This document shows positions 12,669 through 56,701 of a DNA stretch of 64,000 nucleotides, one piece after another. Location of the stretch: the IMG/VR virus record IMGVR_UViG_3300027747_002221, positions 124,001 to 188,000 of that record; one strand, 5' to 3'. The notes beneath the pieces are model-generated. The model did not search any database. It was not told the origin of the DNA and saw nothing but the letters and a program-made list of their open reading frames with translations. The position numbers and the translations under genes are program-made. Each line of letters starts with the position of its first letter. The stretch's first letter is position 1.

Positions 12669-13217
12669 TCAAAAGCTGCGTGTATACTGTAGACGTACTG
12701 CGTCTTTTTCTTCGTCACCGAATGACCGGCTCCAACGAACTGCAACTGCGTCTTGTTTGGTAAGTGCATAACCCACTGCAACGTGTGCGCGTGTTGTCTC
12801 AAACAATTTCTTTGATTCAAAAGAATTACGATAGCGTCCACCTACATCTGCAGTCAAGCCTGCAACTAATGGAAACTTAACACCTGCATCAATAGCGTAA
12901 TGGCTGAAGTGATCTGAGCTGGTAATTTTTTCACCAAGGCGTCCACCTAAATACAATGCACCAAAGCTTTTCTTTGCACGAACTTCAATACCTTGAGAAA
13001 TAGCACCGCTACCAATTTCTGTTTGGCTGTTTTCCATTTTAATACTGTAATCAATACCATCTACTTTGTTACCAACAACAAGTGCTTCCTTGATGTTTTC
13101 TGCGCCGGTTTTGCGATTGCTTTCATCATAGTATTCCAATGATGCATAACCTTGAGCCAATGCGGCACCTGCACTAAATAAAAATGATACTGCTACTAAC
13201 TTAATAATTTTTTTCAA
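12669..13217 (-). CDS. Outer-membrane beta-barrel protein (porin-like)
   Basis: TTG start with AGGAG SD; Sec signal ending AALA; alternating amphipathic strands; C-terminal ...VRLQYTRSF. Confidence 0.8.
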   Translation of the reverse strand: MKKIIKLVAVSFLFSAGAALAQGYASLEYYDESNRKTGAENIKEALVVGNKVDGIDYSIKMENSQTEIGSGAISQGIEVRAKKSFGALYLGGRLGEKITSSDHFSHYAIDAGVKFPLVAGLTADVGGRYRNSFESKKLFETTRAHVAVGYALTKQDAVAVRWSRSFGDEEKDAVRLQYTRSF

Positions 13218-13298: not shown

Positions 13299-14015
13299 CT
13301 ATTTAGCACTCCAGTATTTAGAGTAATCCAAATTTTTCCAATAATGTTCGTTATTACGATACCAAAAGTTTTTAATAAGATACCATGCCATACCAAAGTA
13401 TCCCATCTGTTGAAATCTTCTATTGTCCTGCCCAAAATAATGTTTTACTAGTTTAAATTTTTTAACGTCATACTTTTTAGAAAGAAAGAAATCTTCACTT
13501 GTACCAAACTTCTCAGGGAACCCACCCAATTTGTCAAACTGTTCTTTTCGTGTTAGCATAAATGCACCAATAGCAAAAGGTACTTTATATTTCATAATAT
13601 TATTTACAGCATTAAACAACATAAAACCAAGCTGCGCTCTTATATCATTATCGTAACATTTTACATACAATCCGACTAAATCAAGATTGCTAGATTCTAA
13701 TTCGTCTACTGCATCACGAATAGTATTAACATTAAAGAAACGAACATCGGCATCGATGAATAGAATATAAGGTGTAGTAACCAATTCAGCCCCTCGGTTC
13801 TTAGCAAAGCTCACAGGACCGCCGTCGATAATTTCAATATTCAATCTACCCTTGTTTGCTTCAATAACATCTCGAGTACTGTCTGTAGAACAGTCTGAAA
13901 TAATAATTCTTGTACTACCTATCATTTGGTAGCGAAGATGCGTCAAGAGATTACATATATAATTTTCCTCATTCTTACATGGGACAACTATTGTTATTTT
14001 ATCACTTAATTGCAT
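13299..14015 (-). CDS. Glycosyltransferase family 2
   Basis: ITIVVPCKNEE, DCSTDST, AKNRGA, LFIDADV (DxD). Confidence 0.9.
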   Translation of the reverse strand: MQLSDKITIVVPCKNEENYICNLLTHLRYQMIGSTRIIISDCSTDSTRDVIEANKGRLNIEIIDGGPVSFAKNRGAELVTTPYILFIDADVRFFNVNTIRDAVDELESSNLDLVGLYVKCYDNDIRAQLGFMLFNAVNNIMKYKVPFAIGAFMLTRKEQFDKLGGFPEKFGTSEDFFLSKKYDVKKFKLVKHYFGQDNRRFQQMGYFGMAWYLIKNFWYRNNEHYWKNLDYSKYWSAK

Positions 14016-14133
14016 ACGTGTGTTTATGATCTATGGACTTTCGTAATGCTTTTAACCACAATTTCTTTTCTTTAACTTTATCATGATTGATACACGCTTG
14101 ATACAACTTCTTTACTATTTTTTGAACTTTCAT
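14002..14133 (-). CDS. Possible small basic protein (43 aa)
   Basis: Manual: MKVQKIVKKLYQACINHDKVKEKKLWLKALRKSIDHKHTYAIK; overlaps the tail of the PlcP-like gene. Confidence 0.4.
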   Translation of the reverse strand: MKVQKIVKKLYQACINHDKVKEKKLWLKALRKSIDHKHTYAIK

Positions 14134-14884
14134 TATCGTTTTCCTTAGTCCAGGTTACAATTTCCCATCGTCCATTATAATGTTCAACAAGAGCAGTACA
14201 AGATTCAACCCAGTCTCCGTCGTTCATATATATGATTCCATCAATCTCTTTAATCTCAGCATGATGTATATGTCCACAAATAACTCCATCATACCCTCGC
14301 TTTTTACAATATCCTGCGAGGTTGTTTTCAAACTGAAACATAAAGTCTGATGCTTTTTTTACTCTATGTTTTAAATACTTAGATAACGACCAATATCCAA
14401 ATCCAAATTTATGACGAACCCAATTAAAACGAGAATTCCAATCTAGAACTAAATCGTATAACTTATCGCCTAGAAATGCTAACCAAGGTGCAAGTCTAGT
14501 AATACCATCAAATAAATCACCGTGCGTTATCAGGTAGTGTTTACCATCAACACCTATATGTTCCGTTTGATTTTTTATTTCAATTAAACCAAAACTGAAA
14601 CCATATGGTATCATTGGCCTTAAGAATTCATCATGATTACCAGCAATGTAGATTACTCTTGTACCTCGTTTAGCGTGTCCAAGAATTCTTCGTACAACAT
14701 TGGTATGAGATTGCTTCCACCGCCATTTATTCTGTTGTATTTTCCATACATCAATAATATCACCTACAAGATATAAAGTCTCGCAAGTATTATGTTTTAA
14801 AAAATTATTTAACTTATCAGCTTGACAATCTCGAGTACCTAAATGAACATCACTTATGAATATTGTTTTATAGGTTCTTTGCAT
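14081..14884 (-). CDS. PlcP-like phospholipase C (LpxH/LpxH2-family metallophosphoesterase)
   Basis: TIFISDVHLGTRDCQA, LYLVGDIID, GNHDEFLR, HGDLFD, WLAFLGD, YWSLS, DGVICGHIHHA, NDGDWVESCTA. Confidence 0.85.
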   Translation of the reverse strand: MQRTYKTIFISDVHLGTRDCQADKLNNFLKHNTCETLYLVGDIIDVWKIQQNKWRWKQSHTNVVRRILGHAKRGTRVIYIAGNHDEFLRPMIPYGFSFGLIEIKNQTEHIGVDGKHYLITHGDLFDGITRLAPWLAFLGDKLYDLVLDWNSRFNWVRHKFGFGYWSLSKYLKHRVKKASDFMFQFENNLAGYCKKRGYDGVICGHIHHAEIKEIDGIIYMNDGDWVESCTALVEHYNGRWEIVTWTKENDNESSKNSKEVVSSVYQS

Positions 14885-14897
14885 AAGTTACCTTTAA

Positions 14898-15213
14898 ATT
14901 AATGATAGGTTATTCTGTTACGAGGAAACCTACCGAAACCCTAAGCAGTGTTTAGGCTGCTAATGCGAACTGTTCGTCGTTTGCGTTTACGTTTTTTGCT
15001 TGATTAACGGTCATCGCCTACCGTGCTGTCCACGCTGTTACTATTTGCCCTGTCGAAACCAATGTCAGGCCCATTAGAAAGAACTCTTTAGTATAGTCTA
15101 TAGCACTTGTCTGTCTCTATACAGGATGAAAAATTCTTTCTGGTGGACCTGGCGGGAGTCGAACCCGCGTCCAGAACATATTTCTCTTTGCTTCATACAG
15201 CAATAACTTACTC
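14898..15213 (-). ncRNA. ssrA: tmRNA, circularly permuted two-piece form
   Basis: Minus strand: T-arm GCGGG-TTCGACT-CCCGC and ...CAGGTCCACCA (ends 15141) come before GGGCCTGACATTGGTTTCGACAGG (starts 15072); 7-bp acceptor stem with G3:U; tag frame ANDEQFALAA-TAA (14984-14952). Outer ends are approximate. Confidence 0.95.
14901..14950 (-). repeat. Direct repeat copy A (3' part of the tmRNA coding piece)
   Basis: See 13240-13289. Confidence 0.92.
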
Positions 15214-15315
15214 TTTTACATTATAAAAAAGACTTTTTGCTATCCAGAACATATAGTTGACTACAACTAAGATGCCCCACATATAAACCCAATGCCAATT
15301 TTCAAACATAAGAAC

Positions 15316-15450
15316 TCACTTACCTTGACCTCTATACTTTTTAAAACTAGTACGTCTGGTTTTATTCATAGCACTTGTTTTAGGTTTGCTACCACCTTGG
15401 CAGGTGCGCTTACTAATAACGTGACCTTTTGTATTTCTACCTGCTGCCAT
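15316..15450 (-). CDS. Small basic conserved-type phage protein (44 aa)
   Basis: Manual: MAAGRNTKGHVISKRTCQGGSKPKTSAMNKTRRTSFKKYRGQGK; GGAG SD. Confidence 0.7.
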   Translation of the reverse strand: MAAGRNTKGHVISKRTCQGGSKPKTSAMNKTRRTSFKKYRGQGK

Positions 15451-15514
15451 AATCTACTCCTTATTATATATGAACTACTAACAAAAATCAAGACAATAGT
15501 TGTTCAAACCATGT

Positions 15515-20910: not shown

Positions 20911-21181
20911 GGTCTTTACTCATGGTTGTAGTTGTTGTAATTGTTTGATACATAGTCTCAAACTCTTCGTGTTCTTCAAGTTCCAAACTGAAGTTTTGCT
21001 TGTGATATACTTTTGCCATTCGACGAAATGTCTTTTTGGAAAGTTGATACTTATCACAAATTTCTTTAATAGCTTCACGCATAAACTCTCGCTCGCCTTC
21101 GGTGCGAGTCATAGATGCACTAATTTCTTTCATGCAGTCTAAGATAGCTTTACGATCTACTGGGCTTGATGGTATTGTCAT
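20903..21181 (-). CDS. dsbA: DsbA-like double-stranded DNA-binding protein
   Basis: Start corrected to MTIPSS (ATGA overlap); MKEISASMTRTEGEREFMREAI...SKKTFRRMAKVYHKQNF. Confidence 0.8.
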   Translation of the reverse strand: MTIPSSPVDRKAILDCMKEISASMTRTEGEREFMREAIKEICDKYQLSKKTFRRMAKVYHKQNFSLELEEHEEFETMYQTITTTTTMSKDHV

Positions 21182-21951
21182 AATAAAGGTTTCCTTTCTA
21201 TATCTTCTTCGACACAATTATCACCATATTGTATTTCTACAATTTTTAATGGCTTATCAGTTTCATTACAAAGCTGATGCCATTTTGTTTTACTAATATG
21301 AAGACTATCAAATTTTTGATAAACTCCCAAAAGGTAAACATCGGTACCTACATCTATAGTATAGACTGTGGCTGTTCCTTCAGATACAAACCAATGTTCT
21401 GCTCGATCTTGATGCCTTTGCATACTCAAGCATTTTCCTGGTTCTACTGTTAATTCTTTTACCTTGACTTCTTTACCCTGTTCGTGTAAAACCCTATAGT
21501 AGCCCCATGGTCTTTCTGTTTTAGGAGCCTTCCACTCTTGAAGAATCCACGAACTGGAATTCATTTTATTTTCGCCACCAACACCAAATGCGAATGATAA
21601 ATTACAATCTACAACATCCATTTCTGGAATATTATCTTTAGTCCTGTCGCCGCCGTTGGCAAATATAAGTTCGGCATCGGGATAATGTGCTCTTGTCTGT
21701 TGAATAAAATGTTTTGCCGATCCGTCGTCGTCATCAAAGGTAAAAACTTCGTCGACCATTGATAAATTATTAATAACACAAAGTCTTTCGTTCCATGGCA
21801 TAAAGGCTGCACCTTTTTTACGAACAAGCCAATCGTCAGAATTTAATCCAACAATTAATATGTCACCTAAAGTTTTTGCAGCTTTAAAATAAGCAATATG
21901 CCCAGAATGTAGGGGATCAAATCCGCCAGTGATTAAAACAATTTTAGACAT
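21178..21951 (-). CDS. Cytidylyltransferase-like domain fused to mannose-6-P isomerase-type cupin
   Basis: TGGFDPLHSGH (HxGH), FANGGDR; C-terminal ERPWGYY...LSMQRHQDRAEHWFV...IVEIQYG. Confidence 0.88.
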   Translation of the reverse strand: MSKIVLITGGFDPLHSGHIAYFKAAKTLGDILIVGLNSDDWLVRKKGAAFMPWNERLCVINNLSMVDEVFTFDDDDGSAKHFIQQTRAHYPDAELIFANGGDRTKDNIPEMDVVDCNLSFAFGVGGENKMNSSSWILQEWKAPKTERPWGYYRVLHEQGKEVKVKELTVEPGKCLSMQRHQDRAEHWFVSEGTATVYTIDVGTDVYLLGVYQKFDSLHISKTKWHQLCNETDKPLKIVEIQYGDNCVEEDIERKPLL

Positions 21952-37492: not shown

Positions 37493-37636
37493 TCATAGAA
37501 GATTATTTACCTGTAAGAATTTATATAGTTTTATATAATAGGAAAAGGATGCAGGATACACTTCGGGATCGGGTAATTTCTCACCCCAGCGTTCCTGCAT
37601 TTTGGTATAAAAATCAATTATTTCTTGATCTGTCAT
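37493..37636 (-). CDS. Small conserved-type phage protein (47 aa)
   Basis: Manual: MTDQEIIDFYTKMQERWGEKLPDPEVYPASFSYYIKLYKF...; ATGA overlaps at both ends. Confidence 0.65.
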   Translation of the reverse strand: MTDQEIIDFYTKMQERWGEKLPDPEVYPASFSYYIKLYKFLQVNNLL

Positions 37637-38490
37637 ACATCAACATACTTTAAAGTAAATCTTTCAGCACGTTCTTCATAATTGTCATATCCTCTTGGAT
37701 TGCATACAATACGAGTAGAACCAATCATATAATCAAAATCCTCGTGTGTATGTCCGTGAGTCCACAACTTAATCTGAGGATGATCTAATATGAATGCAGA
37801 TAGATCTGAACTATAGCCACCGTTCATTATTTCTTCATCTTTGTATCGAGGATGAGTCGATAGTTTAGATGGTGCATGATGCCCGACAACTACAAACTTT
37901 TGATTAAATTTACCCTCAGTCATAATGCGAATGTATTCCAACATTTCTCTGTGGTCAACAACTGCATCTTCTGGTGCAAAACGACTTTTACGTTTATGAA
38001 ATTTACCATCCTCATCTTTAAAGATTGTTACCCGATTACTATTTTGAACACAACGGAAGTCATTCATCATGCTTTTCATGTGAAGTAAGGTGATTGGATC
38101 TTCATTATTCATATCAGTCCACAAGGTGCCACCGATGAATGTAGTGTCATCAATAACTTTAGTCTCCTTGTCTAGCAAATACACATTGCTTAACATATTA
38201 GAATCAAGCATTGATTGTAGTTTGTTTTTAGACTCACCAAAATCTCCGTTGTAATGCTCATGGTTACCCATGATAAAGATTACGTGTGGAAATTCGAATG
38301 AACAACGCTTAAAGAAATCTGTAATGCGATTACTGCGAGAACCCTCAAGGAAATTGTGTGGATCAGGTTGACCGATATCGGCAGCAACACAGATATCACC
38401 GCCAAGAATTAATACATCGGCGTTGTCTGTGTTTTGTAAATTGATATCACCAAACTCGAGGTGAATATCTGAGCAAATTGCTACTCTCAT
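37633..38490 (-). CDS. Calcineurin-like metallophosphoesterase
   Basis: SDIHLEF, GGDI, MGNHEHY, GGTLWTD, HHAPS, WTHGHTH, CNPRGY. Confidence 0.9.
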   Translation of the reverse strand: MRVAICSDIHLEFGDINLQNTDNADVLILGGDICVAADIGQPDPHNFLEGSRSNRITDFFKRCSFEFPHVIFIMGNHEHYNGDFGESKNKLQSMLDSNMLSNVYLLDKETKVIDDTTFIGGTLWTDMNNEDPITLLHMKSMMNDFRCVQNSNRVTIFKDEDGKFHKRKSRFAPEDAVVDHREMLEYIRIMTEGKFNQKFVVVGHHAPSKLSTHPRYKDEEIMNGGYSSDLSAFILDHPQIKLWTHGHTHEDFDYMIGSTRIVCNPRGYDNYEERAERFTLKYVDV

Positions 38491-46399: not shown

Positions 46400-47296
46400 T
46401 TAGAATGTGATTGTACCTGAGCTATAGAATTTATATACAACATATCCGCCTGAAGATGTTACGACTACATTAGATCCTGTGGTACTTGCAGCAGAAAATT
46501 CTGTAGGATGACGTAAAACAACTATACCAGAACCACCTTGTCCAAATTGCCCAGCACCCGATTGTCCGCCACCTCCACCTCCACCTCCGCCGGTGTTAGT
46601 TAAACCATTATTAACTGCGCCGCCGCTTGAAGGTTGTCCTCGGCCACCGCCCCCCGCACCGCCATTTCCTCCGGGTGTGCCGTCGCCACTTCCCCCGCCG
46701 CCGCCGGCATAGGCAACATTTGCACCTGTAATTAAACTATATCTTCCGTCCCCACCGTTACCCACCGTTACACCGTTGCTACCTACAGCACCTGCGCCCC
46801 CTCCCCCGGCGCCAAAGCCGGCGGCGGTTCCACCTGCAAATCCTTCTACCGGAGTATAGCTACCTGCATTGCCCGGACCTGCCTGCCCAATAGTTTGATC
46901 GCCTGCTGATACATAACCGCCACCGCCGCCGCCGGATCCGCCTGATCTACCATGTCTGTTTGCAGGTGTGACAGAATATGTTCCTCCACCTCCACCTCCA
47001 GATGCGGTTATTGTGGAAAATACAGAATTTGTTCCGTTAGCTCCAAAAGTGGCTGCAGTAGTTCCCCCGGCACCTACGGTGACCGTTATTGGGGTTCCCG
47101 GGGTGAAATCACTATAACCTGTATTAGTTCTGTAGCCGCCGCCCCCACCTCCGCCACCTGCTGAATTACCGCCTGAGCCGCCCCCAGCAACAACTAAATA
47201 TTCTAATGTGAGGACAGAACGGAGAGGAACATTTGCCGAATTTAATCGGTTGTTAACATTATTAAAATTTCTTGCCGTATGGCGTTTTGTTGACAT
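46400..47296 (-). CDS. Glycine-rich (polyglycine II) adhesin-like protein 1
   Basis: EYLVVAGGGSGG...GGGGGGG...YAGGGGG...GGSGIVVLR...VYKFYSSGTITF. Confidence 0.75.
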   Translation of the reverse strand: MSTKRHTARNFNNVNNRLNSANVPLRSVLTLEYLVVAGGGSGGNSAGGGGGGGGYRTNTGYSDFTPGTPITVTVGAGGTTAATFGANGTNSVFSTITASGGGGGGTYSVTPANRHGRSGGSGGGGGGYVSAGDQTIGQAGPGNAGSYTPVEGFAGGTAAGFGAGGGGAGAVGSNGVTVGNGGDGRYSLITGANVAYAGGGGGSGDGTPGGNGGAGGGGRGQPSSGGAVNNGLTNTGGGGGGGGGQSGAGQFGQGGSGIVVLRHPTEFSAASTTGSNVVVTSSGGYVVYKFYSSGTITF

Positions 47297-50750: not shown

Positions 50751-51695
50751 TTATCCGGTAAATGTTATCGTTCCTGGTCCAGTAAATGTATAATATACAT
50801 TGCCATTTGAAGTAGTAACAGTGTTACTACCTGTAATATTAGATGTTGCAGTAAAATATGCAGGATGTGCAAAAATAGCCACGCCTGATCCGCCAGCTCC
50901 GCTTGCCGATGTGGCGGTGTGTGCACCAGCACCACCTCCACCGCCGGTATTTACGTTACCGGCAACAGCCTGGAATGCTGTACCTGGCGGATTCTCTCCG
51001 CCGCTCCGTCCGCCTCCGCCGAGGCCACCGGGACTAGGAGCAACGGGAGAAAAACTATAATCTGCAGCTCCACCGCCGCCGCCGGCATAATAATTACCAT
51101 TTACCCATGCATTACCATCGCCGCCATATCCTTGTAATGTTCCAGTTTTTCCTGTAGTACCAGCGCCACCGCCCCCACCGCCATACTGTCCGCCACCTGT
51201 TCTTGAATTTCCTGGGGCGCCAGGATTTCCCTGTCCTGCTGTACCTGTACCGCCCGTATTGTTTGGGCCTCCACTACCTGCTGAATTTCCTGCACCTCCG
51301 CCCGATCCCCCGGGACGACCATTGTACTGTGGTGAGAAGTATCCTGTGCCGCCACCGCCACCGCCTGCAGCAGTTAATGTGCCTGTTAACGGAGAAGCTA
51401 AGATTGAGGGTGTACCGGGTTCGCCCCAGTTACCGCCATATGGCGCGCCAGCATTTCCTGCACCACCGCCACCTATTTGTGTAACGGCAAAGCTAGCAAA
51501 CACTCCTGTTGATAATACAAAACTGTTTGCAATATATCCACCTGCACCACCGCCGCCACCATAATAATTGGCACCTCCACCGCCGCCTCCGCCAACCAAT
51601 AGATATGATAATGTAAAGGGCGGGGGTGGGGGTGGCGGTGGTTCGATGTATTGTGCGCCGCCAGATAATACTGCGCCGCCTGTTAAAATTAACAT
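50751..51695 (-). CDS. Glycine-rich adhesin-like protein 2
   Basis: Leader + poly-Pro + polyglycine motifs; ends TFTGPGTITFTG. Confidence 0.75.
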   Translation of the reverse strand: MLILTGGAVLSGGAQYIEPPPPPPPPFTLSYLLVGGGGGGGANYYGGGGGAGGYIANSFVLSTGVFASFAVTQIGGGGAGNAGAPYGGNWGEPGTPSILASPLTGTLTAAGGGGGGTGYFSPQYNGRPGGSGGGAGNSAGSGGPNNTGGTGTAGQGNPGAPGNSRTGGGQYGGGGGGAGTTGKTGTLQGYGGDGNAWVNGNYYAGGGGGAADYSFSPVAPSPGGLGGGGRSGGENPPGTAFQAVAGNVNTGGGGGAGAHTATSASGAGGSGVAIFAHPAYFTATSNITGSNTVTTSNGNVYYTFTGPGTITFTG

Positions 51696-51704
51696 ATTAT
51701 TTCC

Positions 51705-52847
51705 TTAAAATAAGATTGTACCTGAGCTGGTAAATTGATAAACTCTATATCCACCACTTACTGTTATTGTAGGTGAGCCGGTAGTTGTAGTAGCTGCTGT
51801 GTAAGTATCAGGATAACGTATAATTACTATACCTTTACCGCCTGCACCGCTTGGACCACCGCCACCTCCGCCTCCACCGGTATTTTCTGCTCCGTCTAAT
51901 ATGCAGTTTGCAATGGCATTAGTTTGCCCTGGTTTTGCACCACCGCCGCCTGCGCCGCCATACCCTACTCTACGTCCTGCGCCGCCACCTGCATAATACC
52001 TACCTGTACTAGTAATTGCTACTCCTGTATTTGTAGCTGTACCGTTTACATTCATGTAATAAATACCTGTACTACCTGTACCCGTACCTCTTGCAATTAT
52101 ATACGAATTAGCTGGAATTCCGGTACCAGTAACTTGTGTACCTACATCAATTATTCCATCACTAACTGCGGTTACAGTTAATGTATTATTTGAGGAAAAT
52201 ACTGATGCTGTTCCAGTGAAAGGAATTGTTGCATTGCTTTTTACCCCAATGCCACCAAAGCCCTCTGTAGCGGCTGTGCCACCTTGACCACCTGCACCAC
52301 CACCACCCGAACCGTTATCGTTACTATTATTTGTACCGCAATCATATCCCTGGCCGGTAGTTCCTAAACCTTGTACACCCATAATTTGGGCGGCACCTCC
52401 ACCACTACCACCATTACCAACACCTTCTGTGTCATAACGGCGAGGCGAAGTGCCAGAGCTGTTTGGTCCGCCAGCGCCGCCACCAAGTGATGTAATTGTT
52501 GTTATACCACTACCAGATATGGACGAGTTACTACCTTTAAATCCGGAAGTTTCTTCACCATTTACGCTTGCACCACCTGCACCAACTGTAATAGTGTATG
52601 TTACATTTGAACTAATACCAGTTAAGACAGATTCTGCATTTGCACCTCTACCTGAAGATTCGCCGGCGATTGAAGAACGATATCCACCAGCACCACCGCC
52701 ACCTGAGCCAATTGCATCATATCCTCCACCGGAGCCGCCGCCTGCAACAACTATAAATTCTAACGTAGTAGGGGGAGGAGGTGGGGGAGGAGGTATATAT
52801 GTTGCGCCTCCAAATATTGTTGCTCCGCCTGTGATTGTAATTGGCAT
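51705..52847 (-). CDS. Glycine-rich adhesin-like protein 3 (with inserted domain)
   Basis: Same scaffold; extra segment of about 70 aa before YYAGGG. Confidence 0.75.
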   Translation of the reverse strand: MPITITGGATIFGGATYIPPPPPPPPTTLEFIVVAGGGSGGGYDAIGSGGGGAGGYRSSIAGESSGRGANAESVLTGISSNVTYTITVGAGGASVNGEETSGFKGSNSSISGSGITTITSLGGGAGGPNSSGTSPRRYDTEGVGNGGSGGGAAQIMGVQGLGTTGQGYDCGTNNSNDNGSGGGGAGGQGGTAATEGFGGIGVKSNATIPFTGTASVFSSNNTLTVTAVSDGIIDVGTQVTGTGIPANSYIIARGTGTGSTGIYYMNVNGTATNTGVAITSTGRYYAGGGAGRRVGYGGAGGGGAKPGQTNAIANCILDGAENTGGGGGGGGPSGAGGKGIVIIRYPDTYTAATTTTGSPTITVSGGYRVYQFTSSGTILF

Positions 52848-52859
52848 CTTATTTCCTAA

Positions 52860-53816
52860 TTAAAATGTGATTGTTCCTGAGCTGGTCCAAATATATATTC
52901 TATATCCACCTTCTATAATAACATTTGGACTGCCCGTAGTATTCGATGCGGCTGTGTATGTATCTGCATATCTAATAATAGCTACACCTTTTCCGCCGTT
53001 CCCTCCACTTGCTGATCCTGCTGGGTATGAAACTCCTCCACCACCACCGCCTGTGCCTGAAGTTCCATTTGTTCCTGGTATACTCGCGCCGGTGGCGCCT
53101 GCTCCGCCACCACCAGCTCCACCAGCTCCACCTGCGGCACTTGCTCCACCCCCACCGCCGCCGCCGGCGAAATATACATTACTGCCAACAACATTTCCTA
53201 TATTATAAGTTGTGGCTTGTGTTGTAGTAATGATTGTCGAAACTTTACCGATACCACCCGCTTTGCCTGTAGTGCCAACGCTCGCCCCGTCCTCACCTGC
53301 AGCACCTGCTCCACCTCCGCCTCCGCCTGAATAAGCTCCGCCAGTACCACCACGATTACCAAATCCTCCACTAGCACTAGTAGGTTGTAGTCCTGCCCCA
53401 TATGTGGTATGATCGGCTCCGTTCCACGATGCTCCGCCACCTGAACCACCTGCTGTGGCATTTGTATATGGACCATAAAAACCACCCGTGCCTCCACCAA
53501 TAGCTATAACATTACTCGAAGCCAAGATAGATGAGTTCGAACCATTATTGCCGCCGCCGCCGGTGCCGCTTACGCCTGTTCCACCTGCTCCAACAATTAC
53601 TGTTATGAGAGACCCTATGGTAATAGGTAATGCAGTATTTGCTACATATCCTCCTGCACCACCACCACCGCACCCTAAATTAGGAGCACTTGCGCCCGAA
53701 CCACCGCCAGCTACTACCAGATATTCTACTGAACTAAGTACCGGTGGAGGAGAAGGTGGAGGAGGTGTTAAATTAAATCCTGAAAGTGATACGCCGCCTG
53801 AGATTGTAATTGGCAT
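52860..53816 (-). CDS. Glycine-rich adhesin-like protein 4
   Basis: Same scaffold; ends WTSSGTITF. Confidence 0.75.
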   Translation of the reverse strand: MPITISGGVSLSGFNLTPPPPSPPPVLSSVEYLVVAGGGSGASAPNLGCGGGGAGGYVANTALPITIGSLITVIVGAGGTGVSGTGGGGNNGSNSSILASSNVIAIGGGTGGFYGPYTNATAGGSGGGASWNGADHTTYGAGLQPTSASGGFGNRGGTGGAYSGGGGGGAGAAGEDGASVGTTGKAGGIGKVSTIITTTQATTYNIGNVVGSNVYFAGGGGGGGASAAGGAGGAGGGGAGATGASIPGTNGTSGTGGGGGGVSYPAGSASGGNGGKGVAIIRYADTYTAASNTTGSPNVIIEGGYRIYIWTSSGTITF

Positions 53817-53824
53817 CTTATTTC

Positions 53825-53884
53825 CTACCTAAATGTAATTGTTCCAGATTGCCAGAATCTGAAAATGATGTTTTGCGTTTGCAT
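53825..53884 (-). pseudogene. Orphan C-terminal remnant of a glycine-rich paralog (19 codons)
   Basis: MQTQNIIFRFWQSGTITFR, versus NIIYRFWQSGTIIFN at the end of 54824..55774. Confidence 0.8.
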
Positions 53885-53888
53885 AAAT

Positions 53889-54815
53889 TTATCCAACGAA
53901 TCTTATTGTGCCAGGACCAGTAAATGTATAATATACATTGCCATCTAAAGTAGTAACAGTATTACTACCTGTAATATTAGATGTTGCGGTAAAGTACGAA
54001 GGATGTGCAAAAATAACTACCCCTGATCCTCCAGATCCTCCGGCAGTGGCTCCACCTGCCGGATGGGAACCTGCGCCGCCACCGCCCCCAGTATTTACGT
54101 TGCCTGCAAGAGCAAGGAATGTTGTTCCCGGAGGATTTGCGCCGGATCCTCGACCGCCGCCGCCTAAACCACCAGGAGAAGGTGATAGGTTAGCAAAATT
54201 ATAATCTTGCCCACCTCCTCCTCCGCCTGCATAGTAATTACCATTTATCCATGCATTACCGTCACCACCTTGACCTTGCAAGGGACCTGTTCTTCCTGCA
54301 GTACCAGCACCACCGCCCCCACCTCCAGTTTGTCCAAGGGGTGGTCTTGAATTTGCAATTCCGCCAGGATTTCCTTGTCCAGCTGTACCTGCACCTCCAG
54401 TATTAGCTGGTCCTGAGTTGCCAGATGGATTTGCTGCTCCGCCACCCGATCCGCCAGATAGTCCATTAAAGTTAACGCCATCATTTGTACCGCCACCACC
54501 ACCACCTACGGCAATAAGATTTGCACTAAATGCTGCAGAAGATAGGGTTGACGGGGTGCCACTTGCACCTGCTGCACCGCCCCCAGCACCCCCGCCCCCC
54601 AGTGTAAAATTAAAACTATACGAAGATAAGGTGGGCACCACAATACTATTGGCAATATAGCCTCCAGCACCGCCGCCTCCAGCATAAAATGCCCCGCCGC
54701 CGCCACCCCCGCCTGCTACTAATAGATAACTTAATGTAAAGGGTGGTGGTGGCGGAGGTGGAGGGGTAAGGGTAAGCCCTGAAAATATTACACCGCCGCT
54801 AATTGTTAATGCCAT
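53889..54815 (-). CDS. Glycine-rich adhesin-like protein 5
   Basis: Close paralog of 50751..51695. Confidence 0.75.
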   Translation of the reverse strand: MALTISGGVIFSGLTLTPPPPPPPPFTLSYLLVAGGGGGGGAFYAGGGGAGGYIANSIVVPTLSSYSFNFTLGGGGAGGGAAGASGTPSTLSSAAFSANLIAVGGGGGGTNDGVNFNGLSGGSGGGAANPSGNSGPANTGGAGTAGQGNPGGIANSRPPLGQTGGGGGGAGTAGRTGPLQGQGGDGNAWINGNYYAGGGGGGQDYNFANLSPSPGGLGGGGRGSGANPPGTTFLALAGNVNTGGGGGAGSHPAGGATAGGSGGSGVVIFAHPSYFTATSNITGSNTVTTLDGNVYYTFTGPGTIRFVG

Positions 54816-54823
54816 ATTGTTTC

Positions 54824-55774
54824 CTAATTAAAAATAATTGTTCCGGATTGCCAGAATCTGTAGATGATGTTGGCATTGGCATAGGTTACGTTTGGTGAAC
54901 CTGTGGTTGTTGCAGTTGCAAATGTATTTGGATAACGAATAAACGCAATACCAGAACCACCAGCAACACCATTAATAAATGGTGATCCGCTTGGGGAGGT
55001 TCCTCCACCGCCTGCACCACCTCCAGTATTTACGGTACCTACAGTACCCAAACCTGAGCCCACCGCCCCTGCGCCACCGCCACCTAAACCGCCTGTGCCT
55101 GCAGTTCCTCTACCGTTCCATGTGCCGCCACCACCACCGCCAGCATAATACACATTAGCACCTGTTATTGTAGAGGGTGATCCGTCTCCGCCTGAACCAG
55201 CACCACCAGCTCCGCCAGATCCACCAACTGCTCCTGCACCACCTCCACCCCCACCTCCATAATTATTACCAGGTGAACCCGACCCACCAGGATTGCCTTG
55301 TCCAGGCGTCCCTGTTCCGGCAGCACCTGCCGTTGGAGCAGGACCATAGCCTCCACCTCCACCTGATCCTCCAGGTTTTCCTGCATAACCAGTAGCAGAA
55401 GTTATACCGCCACCGCCACCGCCGCCAATGGCAATTACATTTGATGCATAGGATGCTGCAGTTATCGAAGTATTTGCGCCATTTGCACCTGCAAGAGTAG
55501 CTTCTACGTTAGCAGAACCTATACCTCCAGCACCACCTGCGCCAACTGTTATTGTATATAACGTACCGGGAGTGACTGCCAATGCACTATTGGTTATTAA
55601 TCCTCCTGCGCCAGCTCCAGCAACACCACCATCATTACCAACAGTGGCCCCTGAACCACCGCCCCCCGCAACAACTAAATATTGTACTGAACTAAGTGGG
55701 ACAGGTGGAGGTGGTTCAGATGCATATAACGCGCCGCCTACTAATGCCATTCCGCCTGTGATTGTAATTGACAT
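54824..55774 (-). CDS. Glycine-rich adhesin-like protein 6
   Basis: Same scaffold; ends RFWQSGTIIFN. Confidence 0.75.
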   Translation of the reverse strand: MSITITGGMALVGGALYASEPPPPVPLSSVQYLVVAGGGGSGATVGNDGGVAGAGAGGLITNSALAVTPGTLYTITVGAGGAGGIGSANVEATLAGANGANTSITAASYASNVIAIGGGGGGGITSATGYAGKPGGSGGGGGYGPAPTAGAAGTGTPGQGNPGGSGSPGNNYGGGGGGGAGAVGGSGGAGGAGSGGDGSPSTITGANVYYAGGGGGGTWNGRGTAGTGGLGGGGAGAVGSGLGTVGTVNTGGGAGGGGTSPSGSPFINGVAGGSGIAFIRYPNTFATATTTGSPNVTYANANIIYRFWQSGTIIFN

Positions 55775-55783
55775 ATTATGTTC

Positions 55784-56701
55784 CTAACTAAATGTGATTG
55801 TTCCTGAGCTATAGAAGTTGTATACAACATTTCCACCTGAAGATGTTACAACTACATTAGCTCCTGTGGTATTTGCAGCAGAATATGCAGAAGGATGACG
55901 CAAAACAACTAATCCAGACCCGCCGGTTGCTCCCACCCCTCCATACGAACTAGCCCAACCGCCACCGCCACCGCCACCACCAGTATTAGTATTACCATCT
56001 ATGCCGGCATTATTACTGAAATTACCAGCGCCACCGCCGCCTGTGCCACCTGTACCTTGTGTACCTGGTCCATTTCTAGTTCCGCCTCCACCGCCGCCTG
56101 CGTAATTTAATCCAGTTATACTAGATGATGTGCCAGCTCCACCATTACCAGCAACACCCGGTGTTATCCCATTTGCATTTACACCTGCAGAAGCAGAGCC
56201 ACCGCCACCGCCACCCAAATACGCGGGTGAAGTAGTGCCTGTGCCGCCTGCGTATCCTTCTACCGGACTATAACTGCCTTCATTTCCTGTGCCTCCTAAT
56301 GGGTGTCCTCCAGAACCACCTCCGCCGGATCCGCCATTTTGTCCCGGAAGCGTACCTGGCCCTTGATCTGCGCCGACCCCGCCACCTCCGCCAGTAGTGG
56401 AAATACTAACCACACCGCCTATTAATGATGAATTGGCGCCTTTGCCGCCCTGTTGAAGAGCACCGGCATTGGCCTGCCCTGCAGAACCTCCGCTGCCAAC
56501 AGTAATAGTATATGGGGTGCCTGGGGCAATAGTTACGGTAGATTGTCTTAATCCTCCAGCACCACCGCCTCCCCCGCTATTACCGGCACCTCCGCCCCCA
56601 CCTGCAACTATTAGATAATCTATTAAACTAAGTGGGGGAAGCGGCACAAATACGGATAGCCCGTTTGATATTGCCACTCCGCCTGTGAATATAACTGGCA
56701 T
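55784..56701 (-). CDS. Glycine-rich adhesin-like protein 7
   Basis: C-terminus closely matches 46400..47296. Confidence 0.75.
   Translation of the reverse strand: MPVIFTGGVAISNGLSVFVPLPPLSLIDYLIVAGGGGGAGNSGGGGGAGGLRQSTVTIAPGTPYTITVGSGGSAGQANAGALQQGGKGANSSLIGGVVSISTTGGGGGVGADQGPGTLPGQNGGSGGGGSGGHPLGGTGNEGSYSPVEGYAGGTGTTSPAYLGGGGGGSASAGVNANGITPGVAGNGGAGTSSSITGLNYAGGGGGGTRNGPGTQGTGGTGGGGAGNFSNNAGIDGNTNTGGGGGGGGWASSYGGVGATGGSGLVVLRHPSAYSAANTTGANVVVTSSGGNVVYNFYSSGTITFS

What the first reader, a model, noticed from the sequence alone, without database searches (positions are those of the whole stretch)
13299..14884. Candidate phage lipid-remodelling system: PlcP-like phospholipase C + glycosyltransferase
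Seen: the 267-aa phosphoesterase carries the motif set I associate with PlcP (SDVHLG..CQA, GDIID, GNHDE, HGD.FD, WLA.LGD, YWSLS, GVICGHIHH, GDWVESCTA), and a GT2 gene lies just downstream. Known: in Sinorhizobium, SAR11 and other marine heterotrophs, PlcP (often annotated UDP-2,3-diacylglucosamine hydrolase) cleaves phospholipids to diacylglycerol under P starvation, and a neighbouring glycosyltransferase (Agt, GT4) makes P-free glycolipids. Inference: the phage mines host membrane phospholipid phosphorus for DNA synthesis and back-fills the membrane with glycolipid, using a GT2 instead of GT4. phoH lies about 2 kb away. A membrane change could also block superinfection.
Basis: partly seen in the sequence, partly recalled or inferred. 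Interest (0 to 1): 0.85.

Follow-up and report, generated by a model that had tools for sequence, protein, structure and literature searches.

The report
Phage-borne PlcP phospholipase plus glycosyltransferase cassette
A large T4-like aquatic phage carries a bacterial-type phospholipase C (PlcP, routinely mislabelled LpxH) followed by a glycosyltransferase, which probably lets the phage strip phosphorus from host membrane lipids and replace them with sugar lipids, a role not yet reported for phages in the papers I searched.

Summary
A 267-aa metallophosphoesterase (14081-14884, minus strand) and a 238-aa GT2 glycosyltransferase (13299-14015, minus strand) are intact, and every quoted motif is present.

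The enzyme is a PlcP-family protein, not LpxH:
- It is 53% identical (E 1e-91) to the P. aeruginosa PA3219 orthologue and 45% identical (E 2e-82) to the S. meliloti PlcP orthologue.
- It scores 390 bits on an HMM built from cellular PlcP-like proteins encoded directly upstream of agt; E. coli LpxH scores 37.
- It falls far below both NCBIfam LpxH cut-offs.

The glycosyltransferase link rests on context:
- 581 IMG/VR contigs encode close relatives.
- In 84 loci examined, the gene directly after plcP is an Agt-like GT4 in 48, this GT2 in 34, and never both.
- 64 of 80 sampled proteobacterial loci have plcP followed by the GT4.

This supports a phage lipid-remodelling cassette in which GT2 has replaced Agt. 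The GT2 acceptor remains unproven: its fold is generic GT-A, 5 of 78 loci carry it without plcP, and no cellular plcP-GT2 pair was found. No Pho box was found, and phosphorus mining is an inference. The host is probably not SAR11, because the adjacent two-piece tmRNA is of the betaproteobacterial type.

I rate it a new variant of a known system, interest about 0.65.

The parts
14081..14884 (-). plcP-like gene: 267-aa metallophosphoesterase of the PlcP (phospholipase C) family, LpxH-like fold
   Evidence: The ORF is intact. Pfam Metallophos. NCBIfam LpxH equivalogs score only 49.5 and 34.3 bits against cut-offs of 134 and 190. It is 53% identical to the P. aeruginosa PlcP orthologue and 45% to the S. 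meliloti PlcP orthologue. It scores 389.9 bits on an HMM of agt-linked cellular PlcPs. The AF2 model has pLDDT 88.8 with a helical insertion at 127-195, and the 16 best PDB matches are all LpxH. Catalytic D12, H14, D42, N83, H84, H121, H205 and H207 are invariant in 52 relatives.
14002..14133 (-). 43-aa basic ORF bridging plcP and the glycosyltransferase and overlapping both; probably a real small gene of unknown role
   Evidence: tblastn finds it in sister loci of both GT2 and GT4 type. It is intact in all 6 distinct full-length DNA matches. pN/pS is 0.21 in its own frame against 1.17 and 1.73 in the other two frames. It has no family hit.
13299..14015 (-). 238-aa GT2 (GT-A fold) glycosyltransferase with no transmembrane helix and an aromatic, basic C-terminal tail; proposed diacylglycerol glycosyltransferase occupying the Agt position
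   Evidence: Pfam Glycos_transf_2 59.1 bits and Glyco_transf_21 37.7 bits. The D88xD90 and E174-D175 motifs are invariant. The maximum 19-residue hydropathy is 1.06, and residues 196-238 are 30% F/W/Y with 7 basic and 3 acidic residues. Of the 80 best viral loci with this GT2, 71 have plcP directly upstream. It is mutually exclusive with GT4 in the same position.
15463..15491 (-). sigma-70-like promoter match (TTGATT-17-TATAAT) upstream of a 44-aa ORF, the tmRNA, plcP and GT2; tentative
   Evidence: Consensus scan, 10 of 12 positions. The number of such sites in the region is not above the shuffled expectation, so this is only a candidate.

Best explanation
The cassette is a phage copy of the bacterial PlcP-glycosyltransferase lipid-remodelling pathway.

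Step 1. The sequence shows family membership; the chemistry is inferred. The 267-aa protein is a cytoplasmic, membrane-peripheral, Mn-type metallophosphoesterase of the PlcP family. It cleaves the phosphodiester of host glycerophospholipids, giving diacylglycerol and a phospho-headgroup.

Step 2, inferred. Host phosphatases free phosphate from the headgroup, and the phosphate feeds nucleotide synthesis for a 222-kb genome.

Step 3, inferred from gene context. The downstream glycosyltransferase transfers a sugar from a nucleotide sugar onto the diacylglycerol, so the membrane stays intact until lysis. The result is a phosphorus-free and possibly receptor-altering bilayer. In about 58% of sister phages this enzyme is an Agt-like GT4. 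In this phage and about 41% of its relatives a monotopic GT2 has replaced it, probably by cassette recombination and perhaps with a different sugar or linkage.

Expression appears to come from a phage or sigma-70-type promoter rather than a Pho box. Remodelling would then be imposed during infection whatever the host's own Pho state.
For: PlcP identity:
- BLASTP gives 53% identity, E 1e-91, to the P. aeruginosa protein encoded directly upstream of its family-1 glycosyltransferase (PA3219/PA3218 arrangement).
- It gives 45% identity, E 2e-82, to the single S. meliloti homologue next to sinR/sinI.
- Validated PlcPs are only 46-47% identical to each other (PMC8528852).
- On the tree, path lengths are window to Pa PlcP 2.56, window to Sm PlcP 3.31 and Pa to Sm 2.95, while all three are 12-14 from E. 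coli LpxH.
- On an HMM of 61 agt-linked cellular proteins the window scores 389.9 bits and E. coli LpxH 37.1.
- On the LpxH equivalog models E. coli LpxH scores 389 and 364 bits, the window 34 and 49.5.
- The catalytic residues are invariant, and the fold is LpxH-like with a helical cap.

Coupling to a glycosyltransferase:
- Of 84 phage loci, 48 have GT4, 34 have GT2 and none has both. One of the two exceptions is a truncated contig.
- The phage GT4 is 38% identical, E 4e-75, to P. aeruginosa Agt1.
- 64 of 80 sampled proteobacterial loci have plcP followed directly by a homologue of that GT4.
- GT type is interleaved on the PlcP tree, needing 11 changes, as expected for cassette swapping.
- 71 of 80 GT2 loci have plcP directly upstream.
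- The GT2 has no transmembrane helix but an aromatic, basic tail typical of interfacial binding.

Phosphorus link elsewhere:
- Pelagibacter phage Mosig has its plcP homologue divergent from pstS.
- Mosig's host, HTCC1062, lacks plcP (PMC4796936).
- Cellular plcP without agt sits next to ppk or a patatin gene.
Against: No enzyme activity was tested.

The GT2 acceptor is not shown:
- Profile and fold searches return only generic GT2 enzymes such as TarP, WrtF, GtrB, DPMS and ArnC.
- The best PHROG hit is a weak GtrB-like O-antigen conversion family, 28.6 bits.
- None of the 80 cellular plcP loci has a homologue of this GT2.
- 5 of 78 informative viral loci carry the GT2 without plcP, three of them among ribonucleotide reductase genes.
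- The GT2 model is only moderate, pLDDT 75.

Other weaknesses:
- No Pho box with 3 or fewer mismatches lies within 5 kb.
- The tree has a single LpxH outgroup on a saturated branch and no LpxH2 or other LpxH-like paralogues.
- The MED193 and HTCC7211 reference sequences could not be obtained.
- Identification of the S. meliloti gene as the SMc00171 orthologue rests on synteny with sinR/sinI recalled from memory.
Confidence: 0.6

Rival explanations
1. The phosphoesterase is PlcP, but the GT2 is an unrelated surface-modifying enzyme. It would glycosylate LPS/O-antigen or a polyprenyl-phosphate carrier, as in GtrB- or TarP-type serotype conversion, to block superinfection. It would be an independent mobile gene that often lands next to plcP.
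For: There is a PHROG hit to GtrB-like O-antigen conversion, 28.6 bits, E 1.8e-6. Foldseek matches include the prophage TarP, GtrB, ArnC and DPMS at E about 1e-7 to 1e-6. The GT2 stands alone in 5 of 78 loci, three of them among ribonucleotide reductase genes. No cellular plcP-GT2 pair was found in 80 loci. Pelagimyophage glycosyltransferases have been read as O-chain modifiers (PMC7029224).
Against: It lacks the C-terminal transmembrane helices of GtrB, ArnC and DPMS; the maximum 19-residue hydropathy is 1.06. No GtrA- or GtrC-like partner is adjacent. It sits directly after plcP in 71-73 of 78 loci. It is strictly alternative to an Agt homologue in that position, 34 against 48 with none carrying both, which an unrelated mobile gene would not be expected to be.
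Confidence: 0.22
2. The biochemistry is as proposed, but the selected benefit is not phosphorus supply. The phage changes the host envelope to exclude competitors, alter receptor or porin function, resist membrane-active agents, or prepare for lysis. Any phosphate gain is incidental.
For: There is no Pho box near the cassette, and a sigma-70-like promoter lies upstream, so expression need not track phosphorus status. A phage-encoded outer-membrane-like protein follows the GT2, and a homologue of it lies near plcP in a sister locus. Lipid remodelling changes predator and phage interactions and polymyxin sensitivity in bacteria (PMC9457565, PMC9804370, PMC8528852).
Against: Mosig pairs plcP with pstS and carries no glycosyltransferase next to plcP, which fits phosphorus acquisition better than membrane redesign. 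The cellular pathway is a phosphorus-stress response (PMC4796936). By my own rough estimate, a small cell's phospholipid holds a few million phosphorus atoms, about ten 222-kb genomes' worth.
Confidence: 0.15
3. The gene is what databases call it: LpxH (UDP-2,3-diacylglucosamine diphosphatase), boosting or altering lipid A synthesis.
For: JGI and GenBank annotate it this way. The best solved-structure matches are LpxH.
Against: LpxH equivalog models score 34-50 bits against cut-offs of 134 and 190, while E. coli LpxH scores 364-389. Identity to E. coli LpxH is 24% over 122 residues, E 1e-5. The phosphate-binding GNRD of LpxH is GNHD here, invariant in 52 relatives. The closest homologues are the paralogue linked to agt, including in P. 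aeruginosa, whose true LpxH (PDB 5b49) matches at only 19 bits.
Confidence: 0.03

Closest known systems
PlcP-Agt lipid-remodelling pathway of Proteobacteria (S. meliloti SMc00171; Phaeobacter MED193_17359; SAR11 HTCC7211 PB7211_983/PB7211_960; P. aeruginosa PA3219/PA3218)
   Same: The enzyme family is the same: 45-53% identity to two validated orthologues, with all catalytic residues kept. The gene order is the same, plcP followed at once by a glycosyltransferase. Sister phages carry a true Agt homologue, 38% identical to P. aeruginosa Agt1.
   Different: It is encoded by a lytic T4-like phage. No Pho box was found. In this window the partner is a 238-aa GT2 (GT-A fold) instead of the GT4 (GT-B fold) Agt. 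A conserved 43-aa ORF lies between the two genes. The phage clade is at most 57% identical to any sampled cellular PlcP.
LpxH (UDP-2,3-diacylglucosamine diphosphatase, lipid A pathway)
   Same: Both are calcineurin-like metallophosphoesterases with a helical lipid-binding cap inserted in the core. LpxH gives the best structural matches, TM about 0.5-0.6.
   Different: Sequence identity is about 18-24%. It fails both curated LpxH models. It has GNHD instead of GNRD. Its genomic partner is a lipid glycosyltransferase rather than lipid A genes.
plcP followed by other glycosyltransferases in marine heterotrophs (types 3 and 5 of Sebastian et al. 2016; processive Pgt of Mesorhizobium loti, CAZy GT21)
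   Same: This is a bacterial precedent for plcP being followed by a non-Agt glycosyltransferase that makes glycosyl-diacylglycerols (PMC4796936). The window GT2 passes the Pfam Glyco_transf_21 threshold, 37.7 against 21.7 bits.
   Different: No Pgt sequence was available for comparison. The GT21 hit is weaker than the general GT2 hit and may be clan cross-talk. None of the 80 sampled cellular plcP loci holds a homologue of this GT2.
Phage phosphorus-related auxiliary genes (pstS, phoA, phoH of cyanophages and pelagiphages) and the plcP homologue of Pelagibacter phage Mosig EXVC030M
   Same: These are host-derived genes carried by T4-like aquatic phages that bear on phosphorus economy. The Mosig homologue is 50.6% identical and lies next to pstS.
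   Different: Those genes import or signal phosphate, whereas this cassette would recycle an internal pool, the membrane lipid. The Mosig gene is annotated as LpxH and has no glycosyltransferase partner.

Membership tests
PlcP (metallophosphoesterase phospholipase C of lipid remodelling) | Calcineurin-like metallophosphoesterase metal-binding motifs (DxH, GDxxD, GNH[D/E], H, GHxH) | tested here: met
   D12, H14, D42, D45, N83, H84, D85, H121, H205 and H207 are invariant in 52 aligned relatives. Pfam Metallophos 41.5 bits.
PlcP (metallophosphoesterase phospholipase C of lipid remodelling) | Sequence similarity to experimentally validated PlcPs at the level those share with each other (46-47% identity; published screen E < 1e-40) | tested here: met
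   53% identity, E 1e-91, to the P. aeruginosa PA3219 orthologue. 45% identity, E 2e-82, to the S. meliloti orthologue. Reference values come from PMC8528852 and PMC4796936. The published query itself (MED193 EAQ46983) could not be obtained.
PlcP (metallophosphoesterase phospholipase C of lipid remodelling) | Groups with agt-linked PlcPs and apart from LpxH | tested here: met
   HMM of 61 agt-linked cellular proteins: window 389.9 bits, E. coli LpxH 37.1. Tree path lengths are 2.6-3.3 to the two references and 12-14 to LpxH. Caveat: there is one LpxH outgroup and no LpxH2.
PlcP (metallophosphoesterase phospholipase C of lipid remodelling) | LpxH-like fold with a helical cap insertion for lipid binding | tested here: met
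   AF2 pLDDT 88.8 with helices at 127-195 inserted in the core. The top 16 Foldseek matches are LpxH, covering about 260-270 alignment columns each.
PlcP (metallophosphoesterase phospholipase C of lipid remodelling) | Encoded next to a gene that uses diacylglycerol (agt, btaAB, pgt) | tested here: inconclusive
   Sister phages: an Agt-like GT4 in 48 of 84 loci. This window: a GT2 of unproven acceptor in the same position.
PlcP (metallophosphoesterase phospholipase C of lipid remodelling) | Pho-box (PhoB) control, as in the bacterial operons; this defines the pathway's regulation, not the enzyme | tested here: not met
   No CTGTCATNNNNCTGTCAT match with 3 or fewer mismatches between 9312 and 20225; 12 matches in the window against 5.8 expected. 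The host's own Pho-box consensus is unknown.
PlcP (metallophosphoesterase phospholipase C of lipid remodelling) | Mn-dependent hydrolysis of PE, PG or PC to diacylglycerol | not testable with these tools
   Needs an enzyme assay or lipidomics.
LpxH (lipid A UDP-2,3-diacylglucosamine diphosphatase) | Score above the curated equivalog cut-offs (TIGR01854 190.35; NF003743 134) | tested here: not met
   Window 34.3 and 49.5 bits. E. coli LpxH control 388.9 and 364.3 bits.
Agt (GT4 diacylglycerol glucosyl/glucuronosyl-transferase) | GT-B fold, Glyco_transf_4 plus Glycos_transf_1 domains, homology to validated Agt | tested here: not met
   The window enzyme is GT2/GT-A. No Agt homologue lies anywhere in the 64-kb window. 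The GT4 of sister phages does meet the feature.
GtrB / polyprenyl-phosphate glycosyltransferases (phage serotype conversion) | GT2 catalytic domain plus C-terminal transmembrane helices, with GtrA and GtrC partners | tested here: not met
   The catalytic-domain resemblance is weak: PHROG 28.6 bits and PDB sll0501 19.6 bits. There is no hydrophobic segment, maximum 19-residue hydropathy 1.06, and no partner genes.
Pgt-type (GT21) processive diacylglycerol glycosyltransferase | Membership of GT21 and homology to Mesorhizobium/Agrobacterium Pgt | tested here: inconclusive
   Pfam Glyco_transf_21 scores 37.7 bits against a cut-off of 21.7, below the general GT2 hit of 59.1.

The most novel reading that the evidence does not exclude
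A widespread lineage of large aquatic T4-like phages reprograms host membrane lipid composition during infection with a modular cassette: plcP, a small ORF, and interchangeable GT4 or GT2 modules. Relatives were found on 581 IMG/VR contigs. The cassette would convert phospholipid into phage DNA phosphorus and into glycolipids whose headgroup depends on which glycosyltransferase module the phage carries. The GT2 would then be a previously unrecognised, minimal (238-aa, monotopic) class of diacylglycerol glycosyltransferase found so far only in phages. Part of the environmental 'PlcP' and 'lpxH' signal, and of the glycolipid pool in phosphorus-poor waters, would be viral.
Probability: 0.4. Interest if true: 0.8.

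Novelty: new variant of a known kind. Interest (0 to 1): 0.65.

Why it matters
Lipid remodelling is a main way aquatic bacteria lower their phosphorus quota, and PlcP abundance is used as a marker of phosphorus stress in ocean metagenomes.

If phages carry and express the pathway:
- Infected cells would gain an internal phosphorus source. By my own order-of-magnitude estimate, this is comparable to the host chromosome.
- Part of the 'bacterial' PlcP and 'lpxH' gene counts in metagenomes and viromes would be viral and misfiled under LPS synthesis (PMC10653327, PMC9611531).
- The GT4/GT2 alternation offers a natural experiment on which glycolipid headgroups a phage prefers, and points to a compact new lipid glycosyltransferase.

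In the full-text library searched, no paper describes a phage-encoded PlcP or PlcP-Agt cassette.

Tried and rejected
- **Megablast of 20 kb of the window against GenBank phages:** no match, so there is no close cultured relative.
- **Sequence search of PDB:** only weak LpxH hits and no PlcP structure.
- **Pho-box scan:** nothing near the cassette.
- **GT2 acceptor:** NCBIfam, a PDB profile search, AF2 plus Foldseek, PHROGs and PADLOC gave only generic GT2 resemblance. tblastn against plasmids gave identities of 34% or less to unannotated glycosyltransferases.
- **Genome scan:** it sampled only 600 candidate rows, so the closest cellular donor may have been missed.
- **Reference sequences:** MED193 and HTCC7211 PlcP and any Pgt or MgdA sequence could not be obtained. 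Wei et al. 2018 (PlcP manganese and residue study) is not in the held library.
- **S-SRM01 homologue:** left out of the second tree because it sat on a branch of length 9.7 in the first.
- **Rooting on E. coli LpxH:** unreliable because that branch is saturated (length 10). I make no claim about the donor lineage or the direction of transfer.
- **PADLOC:** no defence-system match for any cassette protein.
- **Correction to notebook entry 4:** 15, not 17, of the 40 scanned sister loci carry a permuted tmRNA.
Full report
**What is there**

The window is part of a large T4-like phage. It encodes a gp32-type single-strand DNA-binding protein, baseplate and tail proteins, an ATP-dependent ligase and ribonucleotide reductase. 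It is identical to part of a 222-kb IMG/VR contig.

On the minus strand lie, in order:
- a 217-aa PD-(D/E)XK nuclease;
- a 44-aa basic ORF;
- a permuted tmRNA;
- the 267-aa phosphoesterase (14081-14884);
- a 43-aa ORF (14002-14133) that overlaps both of its neighbours;
- the 238-aa GT2 (13299-14015);
- a 182-aa signal-peptide protein;
- a rubrerythrin.

phoH lies 2.3 kb away.

**Is the enzyme PlcP or LpxH?**

Public annotation calls this protein and its relatives LpxH. Four tests say otherwise.

1. The two curated NCBIfam LpxH equivalog models score it at 49.5 and 34.3 bits, against cut-offs of 134 and 190. E. coli LpxH, run as a control, scores 364 and 389.
2. I built an HMM from 61 proteobacterial homologues chosen only because they are encoded directly upstream of an Agt-like GT4. 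On it the window protein scores 389.9 bits and E. coli LpxH 37.1.
3. Two orthologues of experimentally validated PlcPs turned up in the plasmid collection, which holds some mislabelled chromosomes.
   - The P. aeruginosa gene overlaps a downstream family-1 glycosyltransferase, which is the PA3219/PA3218 arrangement described in PMC8528852.
   - The S. meliloti gene is the only homologue in its record at E 1e-10 or better and lies beside sinR/sinI. Its equation with SMc00171 rests on my memory of the locus tags.
   - The window protein is 53% identical (E 1e-91) to the first and 45% identical (E 2e-82) to the second.
   - Validated PlcPs share only 46-47% identity with each other.
   - By contrast, P. 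aeruginosa LpxH (PDB 5b49) matches at 19 bits.
4. On a maximum-likelihood tree the window lies 2.6 and 3.3 substitutions per site from the two references. They are 2.95 apart from each other, and all three lie 12-14 from E. coli LpxH.

The metal-binding residues are invariant across 52 relatives. The family has GNHD where LpxH has GNRD. The AlphaFold model (pLDDT 88.8) shows the phosphoesterase core with a helical insertion at residues 127-195, and its 16 best PDB matches are LpxH. That fits a homologous lipid-handling enzyme but says nothing about substrate.

**Is the glycosyltransferase part of the same function?**

This rests on comparative context.

- 581 IMG/VR contigs encode a relative of the phosphoesterase.
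- In the 80 best of these plus four loci from long assemblies, the gene directly downstream is a 332-aa GT4 in 48 and the 236-238-aa GT2 in 34. None carries both.
- Of the two exceptions, one contig ends just after plcP. The other has a glycine-rich protein instead.
- The phage GT4 is 38% identical (E 4e-75) to P. aeruginosa Agt1.
- Homologues of that GT4 follow plcP directly in 64 of 80 sampled Alpha-, Beta- and Gammaproteobacterial loci. The GT4 version is therefore the canonical plcP-agt operon carried by a phage.
- The GT2 occupies exactly that position. On the PlcP tree the two types are interleaved, needing 11 changes in the best tree, although well-supported branches force only one. This fits repeated cassette exchange among close relatives.
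- Searching from the GT2 side gives 418 viral contigs. Of the best 80, 71 have plcP directly upstream, 2 have one gene between, 5 have no plcP and 2 are uninformative.
- No Agt homologue is present anywhere in the window.

Two unrelated glycosyltransferase folds alternating in one position behind the same enzyme is the strongest argument that the GT2 does the Agt job or a variant of it.

**What remains open about the GT2**

- It has the DxD and ED motifs of inverting GT-A enzymes and no transmembrane segment. Its 43-residue tail is 30% aromatic and net basic, as in monotopic membrane enzymes.
- Family and fold searches do not resolve the acceptor. It scores on Pfam GT2 and, more weakly, GT21. 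Its NCBIfam hits are all far below cut-off. PDB and Foldseek hits spread over TarP, WrtF, GtrB, DPMS, ArnC and hyaluronan synthase. It has one weak PHROG hit to GtrB-like O-antigen conversion.
- None of the 80 cellular plcP loci carries a homologue.
- A few phages keep the GT2 alone among ribonucleotide reductase genes.
- A surface-modification role therefore stays alive as a rival. The lack of GtrB-type membrane helices and partner genes argues against it.

**Regulation and ecology**

- No Pho box with up to three mismatches lies within 5 kb.
- A sigma-70-like promoter match sits upstream of the 44-aa ORF, tmRNA, plcP and GT2 run, but such matches are no more frequent here than in shuffled sequence.
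- Expression independent of the host Pho regulon is therefore plausible but not shown.
- The phosphorus-supply reading is inference. It is helped by Pelagibacter phage Mosig, whose plcP homologue (50.6% identity) lies back to back with pstS and whose host, HTCC1062, lacks plcP (PMC4796936).
- It is also helped by cellular loci in which plcP neighbours polyphosphate kinase.
- My own rough estimate is that a small cell holds a few million phospholipid phosphorus atoms, about ten 222-kb genomes' worth. This assumes about 2 square micrometres of surface, three phospholipid leaflets and half of the area occupied by lipid.
- The host is unlikely to be SAR11. The phage's two-piece tmRNA matches Rfam beta_tmRNA at full length (134 bits). 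The nearest cellular PlcPs, at 49-57% identity, come from mixed Proteobacteria.
- The phage clade is monophyletic (99% SH-aLRT), and no sampled cell protein exceeds 57% identity.

**Comparison with what is known, and novelty**

The PlcP-Agt pathway is well established in bacteria (PMC4796936, PMC8528852). Full-text searches combining PlcP, LpxH, lipid remodelling, phage, virus and auxiliary metabolic genes found no report of a phage-encoded PlcP or PlcP-Agt cassette. The pelagimyophage survey does not mention it. Two viromics papers list viral 'lpxH' under lipopolysaccharide synthesis.

I therefore rate the enzyme as a new, phage-borne member of a known family. The window's cassette (GT2 in place of Agt, an intervening conserved small ORF, no Pho box) is a new variant of a known system.

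**Verdict**

- Observation confirmed.
- PlcP identity: high confidence, about 0.9.
- Functional coupling of plcP with the downstream glycosyltransferase position: about 0.7.
- The GT2 as a diacylglycerol glycosyltransferase: about 0.5.
- Phosphorus mining as the selected benefit: plausible but untested.
- Overall confidence in the combined explanation: 0.6.
- Interest: 0.65.

Noticed in passing
window 14879-15244 (-): A permuted two-piece tmRNA with tag ANDEQFALAA abuts the plcP start codon. It scores 134 bits on Rfam beta_tmRNA (threshold 84) and 138 bits on tmRNA_permuted. 15 of 40 sister loci scanned carry one within a few kb of plcP, with varied tags. Two-piece tmRNAs in aquatic myophages are already described (PMC9004378). 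The betaproteobacterial type hints at the host.
   Followed up: partly
window 14002-14133 (-): A 43-aa basic ORF overlaps the end of plcP and the start of the GT2. It is present with both GT2- and GT4-type cassettes. pN/pS is 0.21 in its own frame against 1.2 and 1.7 in the other frames, from only 6 distinct sequences. It has no family match and its function is unknown.
   Followed up: partly
window 12669-13217 (-): A 182-aa protein with a signal peptide and a C-terminal ...YTRSF looks by eye like a small outer-membrane beta-barrel. It has no hit in Pfam, NCBIfam, PHROGs or PADLOC. A 73%-identical homologue lies 2 kb upstream of plcP in L003. It may belong to the same envelope-altering gene island.
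   Followed up: partly
window 46400-47296 and 50751-56701 (-): A tandem array of at least seven paralogous glycine-rich proteins of about 300 aa (27-33% Gly, poly-Pro near the N terminus, Pfam Gly_rich_2). It accounts for the GC rise to 0.47-0.52 in this stretch.
   Followed up: partly
L003 (513-kb contig), L006 (378-kb contig): plcP-agt cassettes 80-86% identical to the window's plcP lie on contigs of 340-513 kb. Their flanks look phage-like: GP38 adhesin, CsgF/CsgG curli genes, dCMP deaminase and many small ORFs. These are either very large phages or concatenated assemblies.
   Followed up: no
L001 (Pelagibacter phage Mosig) 4894-6729: The Mosig plcP homologue, annotated as LpxH, is divergently adjacent to a pstS phosphate-binding protein gene and has no glycosyltransferase partner. 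Its host, HTCC1062, is reported to lack plcP.
   Followed up: partly
L119, L125, L149: In cellular loci where plcP is not followed by agt, the downstream gene is polyphosphate kinase (two Roseateles loci) or a patatin-like phospholipase (Arcobacteraceae).
   Followed up: no
L182, L184, L222: The same GT2 (73-77% identity) occurs without plcP, inserted among ribonucleotide reductase genes. In L182 and L184 a GATase-like gene is also adjacent. The GT2 can therefore move and persist on its own.
   Followed up: partly
window 37633-38490 (-) and 21178-21951 (-): The window holds a second, unrelated calcineurin-like phosphoesterase ORF (285 aa). It also holds a cytidylyltransferase-like plus mannose-6-phosphate-isomerase-type cupin protein that might supply an activated sugar.
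   Followed up: no
literature: PMC10653327, PMC9611531: Viral 'lpxH' (K03269) is listed among auxiliary genes of surface oligotrophic seawater and Lake Baikal viral transcripts, under lipopolysaccharide biosynthesis. These may be plcP.
   Followed up: no
window 15316-15450 (-): A 44-aa, very basic ORF lies just downstream of the best promoter-like site and upstream of the tmRNA. It has only a faint PHROG hit of unknown function (20 bits).
   Followed up: no
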